DNA of 63,676 nt, the filler included, from Octopus bimaculoides (lineage: Eukaryota): the NCBI RefSeq assembly GCF_001194135.2. It is 7 parts of 7 records of this genome, joined end to end, with 100 filler letters (N's around TTAATTAATTAA, not from the genome) between each part and the next. Parts side by side here need not be neighbours in the genome. Positions count along the whole stretch, not along the records: positions 24,276 to 31,980 come from NC_068983.1; positions 32,081 to 44,492 come from NW_026421926.1; 5 more parts are not named here. One strand, written 5' to 3'. A program made the position numbers and the translations under genes. Positions 30,831-43,290 of the stretch are shown here, one piece after another. How positions within the stretch are numbered: the stretch's first letter is position 1; each line of letters opens with the position of its first letter. The notes under the pieces are model-generated. The model made no database searches. It saw only the letters and a program-made list of their open reading frames with translations, and was not told where the DNA came from.

Positions 30831-32205
30831 AAGAAATGTTTTAAGATTTAAAACATAATGAGCTTACCTTCAAAACCTTAATATCAACTAGTTGGCCGAT
30901 CAAAATTTACTCTAAATTAAAAAGCAAAAGAGAATACACATACATACATACATATATACATACATACATGCATGCATGCTTATATGCATACATACTAGAG
31001 GAATGTTCCAGTGAAAAGATGAAAAGGTGAAAAAATGCAAACATAATAGACCAGATGCAGAGATTTTGGACGGGGAAGAGAAACCAAGCTCAGTGTGGAC
31101 AAAGAGCTGGTTTGTAACCTAGTTTCTTCCCTAGAAGAAGAATTCAAACAACTAGAAAAAGACGAGAATGTACATATAGTTGTGTGTGTTTGTATGCATA
31201 CATATGAGTCACTCTTGTTTTTATTATACAAATCTGTATCTTCGATCCTAAATGCTGCATCTCTATTCAAATTATCCCGAACTATTATATAAATATTTTC
31301 GATGATAAAAGAGTTATGCATATGCTACGTGTTTGTTTGTGCATGGGTCTACATATATTTTGTTTCCACACACACGCGTATATATATATATATATGAATA
31401 TATATGAAGTAATAATGTTTTATGCAGAACATGGCATTACATCAGAAAATCTGAAGTATTGTCCAGATAAAGCTACATTTGTACTAAAGTTCTCTATGAA
31501 AATATAAATACTATGAAAAATATGTACTTATGATCTCTGCATCTACAGAGAAAAAATAATTGTCTTTATTGCAAAAGAGAACCCAATTATTATTTTCTCT
31601 CCACAAAGGGAACATTCAAATTTATCTCCACCATTTGCATTTCCAAAGCGCGGTTGAACAGAGAACTGGTTATACTCGTACATCTTCATTTAGACGATCG
31701 AAATCTCTTCACAAACATGCTGTTGTGTAAATTTACACACATATATGAGTGGGGTGCAGAGTTCCTGGTTTTATGGGTATCACGACAGGCCCGGATGGAG
31801 CCATCCGAGTATTCATAATAAACTGATTCTCTTGTATTTGCTTTTACTCAATGCCAGAAAATTGTCTACACCCCAATCCGCATACATTCGTAATACATAC
31901 AAATATGTAGATGTAAATGTCTATATATATATATTCTGGCTTTTTTACATTTTCCTATATATATATATATATATATATATNNNNNNNNNNNNNNNNNNNN
32001 NNNNNNNNNNNNNNNNNNNNNNNNTTAATTAATTAANNNNNNNNNNNNNNNNNNNNNNNNNNNNNNNNNNNNNNNNNNNNCAGAAACAATAAAACACATC
32101 TTTAGAAAGACGGTTGGAGGAGTTAAAAAAATAGAGATGGGAGATATTACAGATTTAGAAATATATAGTTTATGAAATACTATAAAGAAGACTAATCTAA
32201 CTTAC

Positions 32206-32277
32206 AGTCTTGTTAACTTGGACAAACTTTGGAAGTCTGCTGGTTTGACTACTTTGATATTATTACCATACAAATTC
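32206..32277 (-). CDS. LRR exon, 72 nt, phase 2-2: xNLYGNNIKVVKPADFQSLSKLTRL
   Basis: Acceptor ttttatgttccag|G and donor CT|gtaagt; open LRR frame. Confidence 0.88.
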
Positions 32278-32925
32278 CTGGAACATAAAATTGAGTTAAG
32301 ACTAAATTTCATGTTACAAATGTGTGACACAATATAGTAAATTATGACCAAACAATTGGATTATGGACAATAGGAAAAGTAGATTACGATCATGATGAAA
32401 CTGATGATGGTGATAACATTAGGGGGTAGTAGTGAAGAATACAATAATGAAACAGGGAGGAAAAAAGACGAAAAGGAAGACAACGATTAAGATTATGATG
32501 GTGGCGAAGAAATAGTAGTGCAAAAGTGATAAGAAATATCGCGAAAATAAAGTNNNNNNNNNNGAAGAAAATCACTGTATGGATAATATACATCGAAATG
32601 GACAACTACAAGCGATATTCAAGGATTTTAATTGGCGTCGATCTAGAGTTAATCACTGTACATAATAAACACATCACATTACACAGATATGGGAATGCAC
32701 TCCTTCACACATAGAGGTGTATACATGCATGTGCTGAAAAGTTTCTCCTCAAGTCACACACTCTCATATAATGCACACCTCATAAATGGGGCTTCGCACC
32801 CTTTCACAGACATTCACAAGCAACAAAAGACTGGGAAAGAAACATATAATTATGTAAGGGAAGATATTACAGATATGGGAATATATCAAAGATATAAGCT
32901 ATAAACGGAGACTGATACAACTTAC

Positions 32926-32940
32926 AGAGAACCCAAATCT
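32926..32940 (-). CDS. 15-nt internally deleted LRR micro-exon (xDLGSL), splice sites intact
   Basis: ttttatattccag|AGATTTGGGTTCTCT|gtaagt inside an otherwise complete cassette; 57 nt are missing relative to paralogues and phase is preserved. Confidence 0.45.
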
Positions 32941-33329
32941 CTGGAATATAAAATTGAGTTTAGATCAACTTTTATGGAACACGTTTGTGCCAGTAAATAA
33001 CATATTTCGAGTAAGGAATTATACGATGGAAGGCGTAAATGTTAGTTTACGGTTCTGTTAAAGTTGCTGATGATGATGATGGTGATATGTTTGGGGTCGA
33101 GTAGTGAATATGATGATGAAGCAGAGAAGAAAATATGGTGAAAGTTTTGATGACGTTGATATTATGTTGCTGAAAAGGTAAGGTTGTTGTTAATGGGGTT
33201 TTGCAGGTAATGATGGTTATGACAATGTCTCTGGTGATGCAGAATAGGATGCTGATGTTGATGATGATGCGGATACTAATGTTTATCCTGGTGAGAATAA
33301 TGATGATGACTATGATGATGATGATGATT

Positions 33330-33368
<39 letters not shown>

Positions 33369-34926
33369 TTGATGATGTTGAAATTTTTGCAGCTCACTGA
33401 GGTAGATTATAGTAGTAAATGACGTTGATGATAAAGAGAACTAATTGCGGTAGTCTGTGGTAACGTATGAAGTTGATGTAAAGTTGATGAATTTGGCAAT
33501 GTTGACGGCTGAGATAAAGAACATTGTTGGCTGGATTTATGACATTATGGATGACGAGGATAAAGAGGTTGATAATAATGATGACGGACAAGAAAACAAA
33601 GACGATGGAGAGAAAATACCATGACAAAGAAGATACTGTAGATGAAGAATGCAAATAAGAGTGTGTGAATTTGAGAAAAAAACAAACGATGATAAAGAAG
33701 AAAAAGAACAAGAAAATGAAGTAAAAGAAGTAGAAGAGGTGGAAGAAAGGGAAGGAGAATGAGAAGGGGAAGAAATAGAACGACAACAATAAAAAGAACA
33801 ATGTGTGGAAGAAGAAGAGGAAGAAAAATAAGAAGGAGAAAGAGGAGAAGAAAAAGAAGAACATGAAGAGTCTCTGTATGAGTGACCTAATTCTAAATGT
33901 GCAACTGTAATGGGTATTGAAGCATGTTATTTAGCATCGATTTAAAGGCAAACACGCGACATAATATACACACAGATATGCACATACACAGTCATACATT
34001 ACCGGACATTCATCCATACACAACGATCATGGACATCATGAAGATTAGTTTGCGGANNNNNNNNNNNNNNNNNNNNNNNNNNNNNNNNNNNNNNNNNNNN
34101 NNNNNNNNNNNNNNNNNNNNNNNNNNNNNNNNNNNNNNNNNNNNNNNNNNNNNNNNNNNNNNNNNNNNNNNNNNNNNNNNNNNNNNNNNNNNNNNNNNNN
34201 NNNNNNNNNNNNNNNNNNNNNNNNNNNNNNNNNNNNNNNNNNNNNNNNNNNNNNNNNNNNNNNNNNNNNNNNNNNNNNNNNNNNNNNNNNNNNNNNNNNN
34301 NNNNNNNNNNNNNNNNNNNNNNNNNNNNNNNNNNNNNNNNNNNNNNNNNNNNNNNNNNNNNNNNNNNNNNGTGTCACAGAGCGTATTACATACATATGTT
34401 GGCACAATCGCATACACATATTCATACTTATATATATAAACACATGTATACACTAAATTTTTTCCCTCATTTGTCTCACACTCATGAATCCAAATTCTCA
34501 GAAGTGGCCCCTTATATTCTCAGACATTCATAAAAAATAACACACAGTTTGGACTGAAATTCCTGGAACATAAAATGTTGGGACTTGGAACTTTTATGGA
34601 AGAGATATTTTGACAGGATATGAAATATTGTGAATAGAATAAGGAATTAGACGATGGAAGACATNNNNNNNNNNGTTAATGATGGACGTAATGAGGAATA
34701 AGGTAAGATGGGAACTTGCATGTTTAAGGGGTTGCTGAATATGACGTAAATGATGATGGTGATGTTGGTAGTGATGTTACTGATGTCGATAATGCTGATG
34801 ATGTAGAAGAGTGTGCATAGGATCGCACTAGTCTATGGTAAAAGAATGAAGCTGTTGATGAAGTGTACGATGATGAACGGCTGAGAAAAAGAAGACTGTT
34901 GACGAGATTTATGAAGATGATCATCG

Positions 34927-41529: not shown

Positions 41530-42306
41530 GATATTAATAATCTTTGCATCNNNNNNNNNNNNNNNNNNNNNNNNNNNNNNNNNNNNNNNNNNNNNNNNNN
41601 NNNNNNNNNNNNNNNNNNNNNNNNNNNNNNNNNNNNNNNNNNNNNNNNNNNNNNNNNNNNNNNNNNNNNNNNNNNNNNNNNNNNNNNNNNNNNNNNNNNN
41701 NNNNNNNNNNNNNNNNNNNNNNNNNNNNNNNNNNNNNNNNNNNNNNNNNNNNNNNNNNNNNNNNNNNNNNNNNNNNNNNNNNNNNNNNNNNNNNNNNNNN
41801 NNNNNNNNNNNNNNNNNNNNNNNNNNNNNNNNNNNNNNNNNNNNNNNNNNNNNNNNNNNNNNNNNNNNNNNNNNNNNNNNNNNNNNNNNNNNNNNNNNNN
41901 NNNNNNNNNNNNNNNNNNNNNNNNNNNNNNNNNNNNNNNNNNNNNNNNNNNNNNNNNNNNNTGAATAACCCAGTTTTAAATTTCCAAATACAAGAAGTAT
42001 TCAAGGATGTCATTTAGCGTTGATAGAGAAGCAACCACTGTTGAGGATATACATACCGTATTACAAACACTTGTTTATACACAGGAATACACTCATTTCT
42101 ACACAGAGTCATACACATTCATTCACTCTGTTTCCCCTCAAGCATCGCACTCTCAAGTGTCCCAAATCTCAGATATAAACCCACACTCATATTCACATAT
42201 CCAGAAACAATAAAACACAACTTTACAAAGACGGGTGCTGGAGATAAAAAATAAAGATGGAAATATATCGCCAGTGAAATAGTATAAAGAAAGATATGCA
42301 ACTTAA

Positions 42307-42378
42307 AAAGTGATTAAACTGGACAGATTTTGGAATGTGTTTGCTTTGATATACTTGATATTATTAGCACGCAAATTC
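42307..42378 (-). pseudogene. LRR exon copy with non-canonical donor (TT): xNLRANNIKYIKANTFQNLSSLITF
   Basis: Acceptor tttatgttccag|G is intact and the 72-nt frame is open, but the donor reads TT|ttaagt instead of gtaagt. It forms the C-terminus of ORF 42303..42587. Confidence 0.75.
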
Positions 42379-42893
42379 CTGGAACATAAACGTGAGTTAT
42401 GAATAAATTTTATGGAACGAATTCGTGACACGATATAAGATATAATGTTTAAACAAATAGATGATGGAAGATATGAACAGTAGATTACTATCATGATGAA
42501 AGTAATGATGATAGTGATAACATTGGCGGTAATAATGATGAATAAATATAATGAGACAGAGAAGAAAGAAGACGACAACGAAGGCAACGATTATGATTAT
42601 GACGGTGGCGAAGGAAAAAGATGATAAGAAATATAAAGAAAATAAAGCACGCCTTCGCACACAGAGGCAACTACATGCATGTACAGAAAAGTTTCCTATC
42701 AAGTCAGACACTTTCCTATATGCCATATATTATAGTCTCACACTTTCCTATATGCCAAATATTATACTCTTTAACAGACGTTACTAATAATTACATACTG
42801 GTGGAGGATCATATAACCAAGTAAGAGAAGATATTACAGATAAGGAAATATATCGTCATTGATATACTATAAATGAAGTCTGATTCAACTTAC

Positions 42894-42965
42894 AGATATG
42901 TTAAACTGGACAGGTTTTGGAATGTTTCAGCTTTGATTTCATTGAGACCATTAGAACCCAAATTC
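42894..42965 (-). CDS. LRR exon, 72 nt, phase 2-2: xNLGSNGLNEIKAETFQNLSSLTYL
   Basis: Acceptor ttttatgttccag|G and donor CT|gtaagt; open frame matching the LxxLxLxxNxLxxIxxxxFxxLxx consensus. Confidence 0.88.
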
Positions 42966-43237
42966 CTGGAACATAAAATTTAGTTAAGTTGAGCATTTAT
43001 TAAACAGGTTTGTGGCAATATATAACATATTTCGAGTAAGGAAGTTCTCAAAGTTCTCTCTCAAGTCTCTCGCTTTCATCGACCCAAATATCATAAATGG
43101 AACAACGCTCATATTCACAAATATTAACAAAAAATGAAAGGCGGGTGATGGAGATTAAAATAAAGAATGGGTCTATATTTCAGATATGGAAATATATCAT
43201 CAGTGAAATATTATAAATGAAGACTGACTGAACTTAA

Positions 43238-43290
43238 ATAGTTTTTAAACTGGAGAGATGTTGGAAGGTTTCTGATTTGATTTCATTGAG
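43238..43290 (-). pseudogene. 5'-truncated LRR exon copy: LNEIKSETFQHLSSLKTI, donor TT
   Basis: 53 nt homologous to 42894..42965. Similarity stops abruptly at 43290 with the acceptor lost; donor reads ttaagt. Confidence 0.7.

What the first reader, a model, noticed from the sequence alone, without database searches (positions are those of the whole stretch)
32081..43290. Hidden array of single-LRR 72-nt exon cassettes: candidate modular, variable LRR receptor locus in a cephalopod
Seen: at least nine homologous cassettes on the minus strand. Each complete one carries a 72-nt exon in the same phase (1 nt + 23 codons + 2 nt), so any subset can be spliced in frame. The intact exons join as NLGSNGLNEIKAETFQNLSSLTYL-DLSNNGLDEIKAETFQYLSSLTTL-DLQKNNIKNITEGAFQYLSSLTSL-NLYGNNIKVVKPADFQSLSKLTRL. 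Known: one-LRR-per-exon phase-2 architecture occurs in LGR/RXFP/GRL101-type GPCRs and other extracellular LRR proteins. Rapid shuffling of single-LRR exons is described for Ectocarpus ROCO genes, and lamprey VLRs assemble 24-aa LRR modules somatically. Inference: here whole intron+exon units are being gained and lost (intact, donor-dead, deleted and truncated copies side by side). This suggests an actively diversifying recognition surface, varied by copy number, alternative splicing or conversion. No parent-gene exons (LRRNT/LRRCT, TM, TIR, 7TM) are visible in this scaffold piece.
Basis: partly seen in the sequence, partly recalled or inferred. Interest (0 to 1): 0.85.

Follow-up and report, generated by a model that had tools for sequence, protein, structure and literature searches.

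The report
Duplicated single-LRR exon cassettes, half decayed
This 12-kb piece is an internal fragment of an intron-rich leucine-rich-repeat gene whose one-repeat exons, with their introns, were copied in tandem; four copies still look spliceable and five are wrecks, a known way for LRR genes to evolve, with nothing here showing a special variable-receptor mechanism.

Summary
On the minus strand there are nine distinct homologous intron+exon cassettes. A tenth is a 100%-identical assembly duplicate. Four carry a 72-nt exon (1 nt + 23 codons + 2 nt) with a ..ttccag/ttctag acceptor and a CT|GTAAGT donor: 42965-42894, 39770-39699, 38437-38366 and 32277-32206. Joined, they give a 96-aa product that matches Pfam LRR_8 (E 2.9e-28) and models as an LRR solenoid.

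The other five are dead. Two are full-length with the donor mutated G>T. One is 5'-truncated with the same donor change. One breaks off after 16 nt. One has a 57-nt in-frame deletion that leaves a 15-nt stub.

The cassettes fall into two intron-homology classes. Blocks of more than one cassette, dead copies included, were themselves re-duplicated. No assembly gap cuts an exon, but two gaps are flanked by redundant sequence.

Best reading: ordinary tandem exon duplication followed by exon loss inside an extracellular-type LRR gene whose other domains lie outside the piece. Exon-versus-intron divergence hints at selection on the exons, but the numbers are small.

Nothing supports or excludes combinatorial splicing or copy-number variation, and VLR-like somatic assembly is disfavoured. 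The parent gene and species could not be identified with the databases available. The same kind of array is already described in Ectocarpus ROCO genes.

The parts
43238..43291 (-). c1: 5'-truncated B-class LRR exon relic (exon nt 19-72), donor TTAAGT instead of GTAAGT; followed by about 190 nt of cassette-type downstream intron
   Evidence: 83% identical to c2 over 117 nt; the central exon part differs from c2 and c4 at 2 of 22 positions
42894..42965 (-). c2: intact 72-nt exon, (x)NLGSNGLNEIKAETFQNLSSLTY(L); acceptor ttccag, donor gtaagt; B class
42307..42378 (-). c3: full-length D-class exon with open frame (NLRANNIKYIKANTFQNLSSLIT), good acceptor, donor G>T (ttaagt): pseudo-exon in the c2-c4 intron
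39699..39770 (-). c4: intact 72-nt exon, DLSNNGLDEIKAETFQYLSSLTT; acceptor ttctag, donor gtaagt; B class
38366..38437 (-). c5: intact 72-nt exon, DLQKNNIKNITEGAFQYLSSLTS; D-class flanks
36607..36678 (-). c6: full-length D-class exon (NLRANIIKYIKAKTLQNLSSLIT) with the same G>T donor loss as c3; sister of c3 (exon 92%, flanks 82-86%)
35102..35117 (-). c7: B-class cassette with intact upstream intron and acceptor but only 16 nt of exon (GAATTTCAGTCCAAAC), then unrelated sequence with an in-frame TGA
34371..34664 (-). Apparent extra cassette: a contig between two gaps, 100% identical to 34926-35219 (the c7 cassette). Assembly redundancy or a very recent duplicate; not counted
32926..32940 (-). c9: B-class cassette whose exon has lost 57 nt in frame; a 15-nt stub AGATTTGGGTTCTCT remains between intact ttccag and gtaagt
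32206..32277 (-). c10: intact 72-nt exon, NLYGNNIKVVKPADFQSLSKLTR; D class; 125 nt from the edge of the piece
35439..36956 (-). Higher-order duplicate: c6 with its upstream and downstream intron is homologous to 40881-42649 (c3 and the intron leading to c4). A multi-cassette block was therefore re-duplicated after the donor had died
   Evidence: 36237-36956 vs 41962-42649 at 79% over 722 nt; 35439-35921 vs 40881-41357 at 72%
38572..38823 (.). 121-nt, 98.3%-identical duplicate on both sides of the 10-N gap at 38693-38702: an unmerged contig overlap inside the c4-c5 intron

Best explanation
The piece is an internal stretch of a multi-exon gene on the minus strand that encodes an extracellular-type ('typical', 24-residue) leucine-rich-repeat domain, one repeat per 72-nt phase-2 exon.

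An ancestral intron+exon unit was copied in tandem, most simply by unequal crossing-over between the homologous introns. It diverged into two classes, B and D, and blocks of two or more cassettes were then copied again.

Extra copies were later inactivated by lesions that remove them from the mRNA: donor loss, truncation or deletion. They now sit as pseudo-exons inside the introns of the four survivors. These four (c2, c4, c5, c10) are most likely spliced in order into four consecutive LRRs.

Shown: the anatomy, the homology and the lesions. Inferred: that the gene is expressed, that splicing is constitutive, and the unequal-crossover mechanism.
For: - **Exon structure.** There are four exons of exactly 72 nt in the same phase, each with a strong acceptor and a perfect GTAAGT donor.
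- **LRR identity.** The joined product matches LRR_8 at E 2.9e-28. It also matches IGFALS, TLR3, LRRC15 and LGR5/4 ectodomains at E 1e-44 to 1e-28. The single-sequence AlphaFold model has pLDDT 79.7 and pTM 0.74, with one beta-strand per exon junction. Foldseek gives TM 0.74-0.87 to TLR2, Nogo receptor, NGL-3 and VLR/repebody LRRs.
- **One family.** All nine cassettes share flanking intron homology and one orientation.
- **Re-duplication.** c3 and c6 share the same donor-killing G>T and lie in a 79%-identical block of more than 700 nt that continues into the next intron. Duplication therefore acted on multi-cassette blocks that already contained a dead exon.
- **Nature of the lesions.** Four of the five dead copies (c1, c3, c6, c9) carry a lesion that silently drops the exon rather than poisoning the reading frame. 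The exception is c7, which keeps its acceptor and runs into an in-frame TGA.
- **Exons evolve differently from introns.** The exon is the least conserved window between c10 and c3/c6, and the most conserved window between c3 and c6. This suggests selection acted on the exons at some time.
- **Precedent.** The same architecture, 72-nt LRR exons with inactivated LRR exons lying in the introns, is described for Ectocarpus ROCO genes (PMC3341825; PMC11378527).
Against: - There is no transcript evidence of any kind.
- No annotated or predicted protein containing these exons was found. The word-indexed search gave one hit at 44% identity. The exhaustive search gave only generic LRR matches, with best local identity 47%. 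The host genome seems to be absent from these databases, so this absence says little.
- More than half of the cassettes are dead. With about 20-30% divergence, four copies could remain intact for some time without selection.
- The selection tests rest on 72 nt per copy and on non-independent pairs.
- Six assembly gaps, two with proven redundancy, make copy number and order uncertain.
Confidence: 0.6

Rival explanations
1. Dead locus. The whole array is a decaying pseudogene or an orphan block of duplicated LRR exons that is no longer transcribed. The four 'intact' exons have simply not been hit yet.
For: - Five of nine cassettes are already inactivated.
- Retroelement-like sequence has been inserted.
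- No matching protein exists in any database searched.
- No first or last exon, or any non-LRR exon, is visible in 12.4 kb.
- dN/dS is about 1 or higher in several pairs, which is also what relaxed constraint gives.
Against: - All four intact copies keep both splice sites, an open frame and every LRR scaffold residue, although they differ from each other by 18-35%.
- Exon divergence differs from the flanking introns in both directions, which pure neutrality does not predict.
- Most lesions in the dead copies are of the exon-removing kind.
- Failure to find a protein is uninformative, because the host genome is not in the databases.
Confidence: 0.2
2. This is a modular, actively variable LRR recognition receptor. 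Diversity is produced by combinatorial exon inclusion (all exons are symmetric and phase 2), by conversion among cassettes, and/or by copy-number variation between individuals.
For: - Any subset of the 72-nt exons can be joined in frame, with the junction codon always CT|G or CT|A, both Leu.
- Cassette turnover is recent and repeated.
- The exon of c10 has diverged faster than its introns (Fisher p 0.01-0.02), and dN exceeds dS for c5-c10, c4-c10 and c4-c5.
- c4 and c5, which are neighbours of different classes, share an identical 19-nt tract in the 3' half of the exon. This is compatible with a short conversion.
- There are precedents: Ectocarpus ROCO exon shuffling and alternative splicing (PMC3341825, PMC11378527), crab VLR2 isoforms (PMC10045472), human NLR LRR-exon modularity (PMC6642158), and hyperdiverse GRL101-like LRR-GPCR clusters linked to parasite resistance in snails (PMC12297450).
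Against: - Nothing here bears on splicing patterns, tissue or individuals.
- Only four exons are usable.
- The statistics are marginal, and the c4/c5 similarity is not significant (3/32 against 7/32 differences).
- No immune-type domain (TIR, CTL, Ig) or any other domain is visible.
- Symmetric phase-2 72-nt LRR exons are also the rule in constitutively spliced hormone-receptor genes (PMC11378527, citing Koo 1991 and Kobe 1994).
- The one apparent copy-number difference is an assembly duplicate.
Confidence: 0.12
3. Assembly artefact. The repeated cassettes are produced or inflated by mis-assembly of a short-read scaffold, through haplotype redundancy or mis-joined repeats.
For: - The piece has six gaps.
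- One contig (34371-34664) is 100% identical to a neighbour.
- One 10-N gap is flanked by a 98% duplicate.
Against: - The nine cassettes differ from each other by 8-39% in the exon and 14-35% in the flanks, and each has its own lesion. They are old paralogues, not redundant reads or haplotypes.
- Several pairs lie within single gap-free contigs: c1-c2-c3, c4 alone, c6-c7, and c9 (for the gap positions).
Confidence: 0.03
4. VLR-like germline cassette bank that is assembled somatically by copy-choice or gene conversion.
For: - The modules are 24-aa LRRs in a tandem bank, some of them incomplete.
- The fold resembles VLRs as much as any other LRR.
Against: - The cassettes are bona fide exons with polypyrimidine tract, AG and GTAAGT. 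VLR donor cassettes are unspliced coding fragments (PMC13428168).
- There are no LRRNT, LRRCT or stalk pieces.
- All structural matches are generic LRR matches.
Confidence: 0.01

Closest known systems
Ectocarpus and brown-algal ROCO genes with dynamic LRR exon shuffling (Zambounis et al. 2012, PMC3341825; PMC11378527)
   Same: - One LRR per 72-nt exon, in phase 2.
- Closely related, recently duplicated exons.
- 'Inactivated exons' (lost splice sites or nonsense mutations) lying within introns of the same gene.
- Suggested positive selection on the exons.
   Different: - That system is in a different kingdom, with a different LRR consensus register and a ROC-COR GTPase partner domain.
- There, intronic LRR copies are often on the opposite strand. 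Here all copies are co-oriented.
- Alternative splicing is documented there and unknown here.
LGR, glycoprotein-hormone, relaxin and GRL101-type LRR GPCR genes, including the hyperdiverse GRL101-like clusters of Biomphalaria (PMC12297450)
   Same: - 'Typical' 24-residue extracellular LRRs.
- About 72-nt exons separated by phase-2 introns (PMC11378527, citing Koo 1991).
- LGR4/5 ectodomains are among the best PDB matches.
- One LRR+7tm_1 protein is among the top database hits at 41% identity.
   Different: - No 7TM, LDLa, CTL, hinge or cap exon is in the piece, so membership cannot be tested.
- In those old genes the introns between LRR exons are not reported to be mutually homologous (my own knowledge). 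Here they still are, which means much more recent duplication.
Tetrahymena 90-bp-exon LRR gene arrays (PMC6564038)
   Same: - Tandem arrays of equal-length LRR exons.
- Extreme phase-2 bias.
- Clonal expansion of intron/exon units by unequal crossing-over.
- Young copies still alike at the nucleotide level.
   Different: - Those exons are 90 bp, in a ciliate, in thousands of genes.
- Here there is one short array of 72-nt exons, more than half of it dead.
Vertebrate Slit genes (each LRR on its own 72-bp exon; recalled from Little et al. 2002, not re-read here)
   Same: 72-nt single-LRR exons of the typical class that allow in-frame skipping.
   Different: - Slit LRR blocks are bounded by LRRNT and LRRCT caps and followed by EGF and LamG domains. 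None is visible here.
- Slit exons are ancient, and homologous introns are not reported for them.
Lamprey and hagfish variable lymphocyte receptors
   Same: 24-residue LRR modules held as a bank of partly incomplete cassettes; similar fold.
   Different: VLR cassettes are not exons and are assembled somatically by a gene-conversion-like process (PMC13428168). Here every cassette has, or had, standard splice sites.

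Membership tests
Typical-class extracellular leucine-rich repeat (Pfam LRR_8 / LRR clan) | 24-residue repeat with the LxxLxLxxNxL core and a conserved Phe, significant against LRR profiles | tested here: met
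   LRR_8 E 2.9e-28, LRR_4 6e-16, LRR_1 2e-12. PDB phmmer hits IGFALS, TLR3, LRRC15 and LGR5 at 1e-44 to 1e-34. L2, N5, I/L7, I/V10, F15, L18, L21 and the junction Leu are kept in all four intact exons.
Typical-class extracellular leucine-rich repeat (Pfam LRR_8 / LRR clan) | Curved solenoid fold with one beta-strand per repeat | tested here: met
   AlphaFold2 single-sequence model: pLDDT 79.7, pTM 0.74, strands at residues 23-25, 47-51 and 71-75. Foldseek TM 0.74-0.87 to TLR2, Nogo receptor, NGL-3 and VLRs.
One-LRR-per-exon, phase-2 gene architecture (LGR/GPHR/GRL101, Slit, ROCO) | Each LRR on its own exon of about 72 nt, flanked by phase-2 introns | tested here: met
   Six full-length exons of exactly 72 nt, 1+69+2, four of them with AG...GT.
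LGR / GRL101-type LRR GPCR | Rhodopsin-type 7TM domain (plus LDLa, CTL or hinge) in the same gene | not testable with these tools
   No such exon in the 12.4-kb piece. No host genome or transcriptome is in the databases.
Ectocarpus-type dynamic LRR exon shuffling | Recently duplicated LRR exons, with inactivated LRR exons lying inside introns | tested here: met
   Five inactivated copies lie between four intact ones, with flanks 65-86% identical.
Ectocarpus-type dynamic LRR exon shuffling | LRR exon copies also on the non-coding strand (shuffling, not only tandem duplication) | tested here: not met
   All cassette matches are on the minus strand.
Ectocarpus-type dynamic LRR exon shuffling | Positive selection on LRR exons | tested here: inconclusive
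   dN/dS is 3.0 for c5-c10, 15 for c4-c10 and 1.7 for c4-c5, but 0.35 for c2-c4 (23 codons each). Exon less conserved than flanks for c10 vs c3 and c6, p 0.02 and 0.012, not independent.
Ectocarpus-type dynamic LRR exon shuffling | Alternative splicing giving different LRR contents | not testable with these tools
   No transcript data available.
VLR-type somatically assembled LRR receptor | Donor cassettes are unspliced coding fragments flanking an incomplete germline gene that has LRRNT, LRRCT and stalk parts | tested here: not met
   Cassettes carry a polypyrimidine tract, AG and GTAAGT. No cap or stalk sequences were found.
Dscam-type cluster of alternative exons | All members of the array are splice-competent variants of one exon, of which one is chosen | tested here: not met
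   Five of nine members lack a donor or most of the exon. The intact ones encode successive repeats of a solenoid that needs several repeats.

The most novel reading that the evidence does not exclude
An animal counterpart of the brown-algal ROCO system. In this reading a cephalopod LRR receptor has a ligand-binding arc that is remodelled on short evolutionary time-scales by birth and death of single-LRR exon cassettes under positive selection. Its symmetric phase-2 exons would also be combined differently between cells, tissues or individuals to widen recognition, whether immune or chemotactile.
Probability: 0.1. Interest if true: 0.7.

Novelty: new member of a known kind. Interest (0 to 1): 0.33.

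Why it matters
If the ordinary reading holds, this is a clean small example of how LRR domains grow and shrink: an exon and its intron are copied, and the surplus copies are then silenced by splice-site loss. It is also a warning for gene annotation in gap-rich short-read assemblies, where pseudo-exons with open frames (c3, c6) are easily built into gene models.

It would matter more if transcripts or population data showed variable exon usage or copy number. Exon-level diversification of an LRR receptor is documented in brown algae and ciliates, and claimed for a crab gene. I found no report of it for cephalopods, whose immune and chemotactile recognition repertoires are poorly understood.

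Tried and rejected
- **Parent gene, word-indexed search.** The 96-aa product gave one hit at 44% identity.
- **Parent gene, exhaustive search.** The search gave 75,012 LRR hits, but the best local identity was 47%. They were mostly giant metagenomic LRR proteins without names, so this is uninformative.
- **Extending the locus.** Exact look-up of two window ORFs in public assemblies found nothing on record.
- **Related cassettes in metagenome contigs.** Two degenerate DNA patterns gave 0 hits.
- **Species check.** The retroelement-like ORF gave 56 homologues, all at 67% identity or less, so the host genome is not in the database and 'cephalopod' stays unverified.
- **Other exons in the piece.** Pfam scans of 14 stop-free, non-low-complexity segments found nothing above noise.
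- **RT fragment in the GC-rich block.** My by-eye impression of a reverse-transcriptase fragment at 43660-44320 was not confirmed by Pfam.
- **A cassette hidden in gap 34057-34370.** I inferred this from a match of 33756-33972 to the intron downstream of c4. The match is largely (TTC)n low-complexity sequence, so I dropped it.
- **First classification of c1.** I had placed c1 in class D. It is B class, closest to c2.
- **c4/c5 micro-conversion.** The numbers are too small to claim it.
- **Non-coding RNA.** The Rfam and tRNA scans gave only a sub-threshold mir-297 hit in a (TG)n-like repeat.
- **Bacterial promoter/terminator scan.** It is irrelevant for this eukaryotic sequence.

Full report
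**Material.** Only 32081-44492 is real sequence. It contains six runs of N: 32554-32563, 34057-34370, 34665-34674, 37578-37866, 38693-38702 and 41551-41961. The piece is AT-rich (GC about 0.32) and full of trinucleotide microsatellites.

**Check of the observation.**
- Each sits in an exon of exactly 72 nt, read as 1 nt + 23 codons + 2 nt. Each is preceded by a pyrimidine-rich tract ending ttccag, tttccag or ttctag, and followed by a perfect gtaagt.
- The junction codon is always CT|G (Leu), so any of these exons can follow any other in frame.
- Self-BLAST, a multiple alignment and two motif scans show that the exons are embedded in homologous intron sequence. They also show further decayed copies.
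- The acceptor-side motif occurs 8 times and the donor-side motif 7 times, all on the minus strand. None is expected in 100 shuffles.
- An HMM built from the exon peptides finds no additional copy in any of the six frames.

**Inventory, 5' to 3' on the minus strand.**

| Cassette | Coordinates | Class | State |
|---|---|---|---|
| c1 | 43291-43238 | B | 5'-truncated at exon nt 19; donor TTAAGT |
| c2 | 42965-42894 | B | intact |
| c3 | 42378-42307 | D | full length, open frame, donor GT>TT |
| c4 | 39770-39699 | B | intact |
| c5 | 38437-38366 | D | intact |
| c6 | 36678-36607 | D | full length, same GT>TT donor loss |
| c7 | 35117-35102 | B | good acceptor, 16 nt of exon, then unrelated sequence with an in-frame TGA |
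| c9 | 32940-32926 | B | 57-nt in-frame deletion; 15-nt stub between intact ag and gtaagt |
| c10 | 32277-32206 | D | intact |

Classes B and D are defined by which flanks are most alike. This gives nine cassettes: four splice-competent and five dead.

**Assembly gaps.**
- No gap lies within an exon or within 250 nt of an intact one, so the reading frames are safe.
- Two gaps are artefactual. The contig 34371-34664 lies between two gaps and is 100% identical to 34926-35219. The apparent tenth cassette is therefore redundancy, or at best a brand-new duplicate.
- The 10-N gap at 38693-38702 is flanked by a 121-nt duplicate at 98.3% identity. This is an unmerged contig overlap.
- The larger gaps (289-411 N, estimated sizes) lie in introns next to microsatellites or a repeat-derived ORF. 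They could hide more sequence.
- I could not substantiate a hidden cassette. The one hint was mostly low-complexity sequence.

**What the exons encode.**
- The joined 96-aa product is an unambiguous 'typical' 24-residue LRR. It matches LRR_8 at E 2.9e-28.
- Its best solved relatives are IGFALS, TLR3, LRRC15, LGR5/4 and LRIG1.
- A single-sequence AlphaFold model has pLDDT 79.7 and pTM 0.74, with one strand per exon junction. It superposes on TLR2, Nogo receptor, NGL-3 and VLR/repebody LRRs at TM 0.74-0.87.
- These matches are generic. They say 'extracellular-type LRR arc' and nothing about the rest of the protein.

**History of the array.**
- All cassettes descend from one intron+exon unit.
- Within-class flanks are 70-86% identical, and between-class flanks are 65-70% identical.
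- Duplication did not act on single cassettes only. 36237-36956 matches 41962-42649 at 79% over 722 nt, and 35439-35921 matches 40881-41357 at 72%. So c6 plus the intron leading to c7 is a copy of c3 plus the intron leading to c4.
- c3 and c6 share the same donor-killing G>T. That block was therefore copied after the exon had already died.
- c1 is a partial copy lying 344 nt upstream of c2.
- Read as B-D pairs, the array is c2-c3†, c4-c5, (c6†), c7†, c9†-c10, where † marks a dead copy. Repeated duplication has been followed by loss of one or both members, leaving B, B, D, D. This is what unequal crossing-over between homologous introns, followed by pruning, would produce. The mechanism is inferred, not shown.

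**Selection.**
- For c10 against c3 and c6, the exon is the least conserved 72-nt window of a roughly 500-nt alignment. Exon identity is 0.67 and 0.61, against 0.70-0.87 in most of the flanks. Fisher p is 0.02 and 0.012.
- For c3 against c6, the exon is the most conserved window (0.92 against 0.77-0.89, p 0.04).
- Nei-Gojobori dN/dS is 0.46/0.15 for c5-c10, 0.55/0.04 for c4-c10 and 0.35/0.20 for c4-c5, but 0.16/0.47 for c2-c4.
- With 23 codons per exon and non-independent pairs, this is only a hint that exons and introns have not evolved alike. It argues mildly against a locus that has always been neutral, and is compatible with diversifying change on some live exons.
- c4 and c5 share an identical 19-nt tract in the 3' half of the exon, although they belong to different classes. 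The excess similarity is not significant (3/32 against 7/32 differences).

**Search for the parent gene and species.**
- The word-indexed protein search returned one 44% hit.
- The exhaustive search returned 75,012 LRR proteins, none closer than 47% locally. Most were unnamed metagenomic giants, and one carried LRR plus 7tm_1.
- Window ORFs are not on record in the assembly index.
- Cassette DNA patterns have no match in metagenome contigs.
- A retroelement-like ORF at 37164-37577 (+) has 56 homologues, all at 67% identity or less. The host genome is evidently not in these resources.
- So the absence of a matching protein is uninformative, and the label 'cephalopod' is unverified.
- No other coding exon was detected in the piece.

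**Comparison with what is known.**
- One LRR per 72-nt phase-2 exon is classical for glycoprotein-hormone, LGR and GRL101-type receptors (PMC11378527, citing Koo 1991 and Kobe 1994). By my recollection it also holds for Slit.
- The specific picture seen here is described for Ectocarpus ROCO genes: recently duplicated 72-nt LRR exons with 'inactivated exons' lying in the introns, plus signs of positive selection (PMC3341825). It has been extended to other brown algae, with alternative splicing (PMC11378527).
- Tetrahymena has clonal arrays of 90-bp phase-2 LRR exons (PMC6564038).
- Human NLR genes show LRR-exon modularity that is used for alternative splicing (PMC6642158).
- A crab LRR gene gives ten isoforms (PMC10045472).
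- In molluscs, GRL101-like LRR-GPCR clusters are hyperdiverse and associated with schistosome resistance in Biomphalaria (PMC12297450). A receptor of that type is therefore a plausible but untested parent.
- A 2026 review of animal immune diversification mentions no LRR-based system in cephalopods (PMC13428168).
- The VLR analogy fails on anatomy. These cassettes are ordinary exons.

**Verdict.** The finding is real and nicely structured, but it is an instance of a known evolutionary process. The variable-receptor reading is not excluded and not supported. I rate it as a new member of a known kind, of modest interest. The interest would rise sharply only if transcripts or population data showed variable exon use.

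Noticed in passing
window 37164-37577 (+), running into the gap at 37578: A 137-aa ORF whose last 98 residues (KKEYYRRVRSILKTEL...HHPKSDIERLYIQRTEGGRGLIQLENYY...) have 56 homologues at 44-67% identity. These are short ORFs on large ENA contigs of up to 6 Mb, with no Pfam domain. It looks like the C-terminal part of a retroelement protein inserted in the c5-c6 intron, on the strand opposite to the LRR gene.
   Followed up: partly
window about 43660-44320: A block with GC 0.44-0.50, against about 0.32 elsewhere. It is bounded on both sides by CA/TG-rich imperfect microsatellites and lies just upstream of the truncated cassette c1. By eye some frames resemble a degraded reverse transcriptase, but Pfam finds nothing. 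It is probably an unrelated inserted element.
   Followed up: partly
window 44323-44391 (+): Sub-threshold Rfam hit to mir-297 (41 bits against a gathering score of 90) inside a (TG)n/(TGTA)n-like repeat. It is almost certainly a low-complexity artefact.
   Followed up: no
window 32081-43600, whole array: There is strong strand asymmetry: on the + strand A 4548 vs T 2919 and G 2489 vs C 1412, with cumulative GC skew rising steadily. The sense (minus) strand of the introns is therefore T/C-rich, largely because of many (TTC)n, (ATT)n and (CAT)n runs. The asymmetry stops at the GC-rich block. This is consistent with one transcription unit but was not analysed further.
   Followed up: no
window 39715-39733 and 38382-38400 (minus strand): The neighbouring exons c4 (class B) and c5 (class D) share an identical 19-nt tract, CCTTCCAATATTTGTCCAG, encoding FQYLS. 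c4 differs here from its class sibling c2. This could be a short gene-conversion tract, but it is not statistically significant.
   Followed up: partly
window 42307-42378 vs 36607-36678: The two donor-dead exons c3 and c6 are more alike (92%) than their flanks (82-86%), and differ by 3 synonymous and 3 non-synonymous changes. This is unexpected for long-dead sequence. It could reflect recent conversion, local mutation-rate differences or chance.
   Followed up: partly
window 32926-32940 (minus strand): The c9 stub is a 15-nt, frame-preserving micro-exon (1 nt + 4 codons + 2 nt) with intact splice sites. If it were ever included it would insert five residues (junction residue, then DLGS) between two LRRs. 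Whether it is recognised by the spliceosome is unknown.
   Followed up: no
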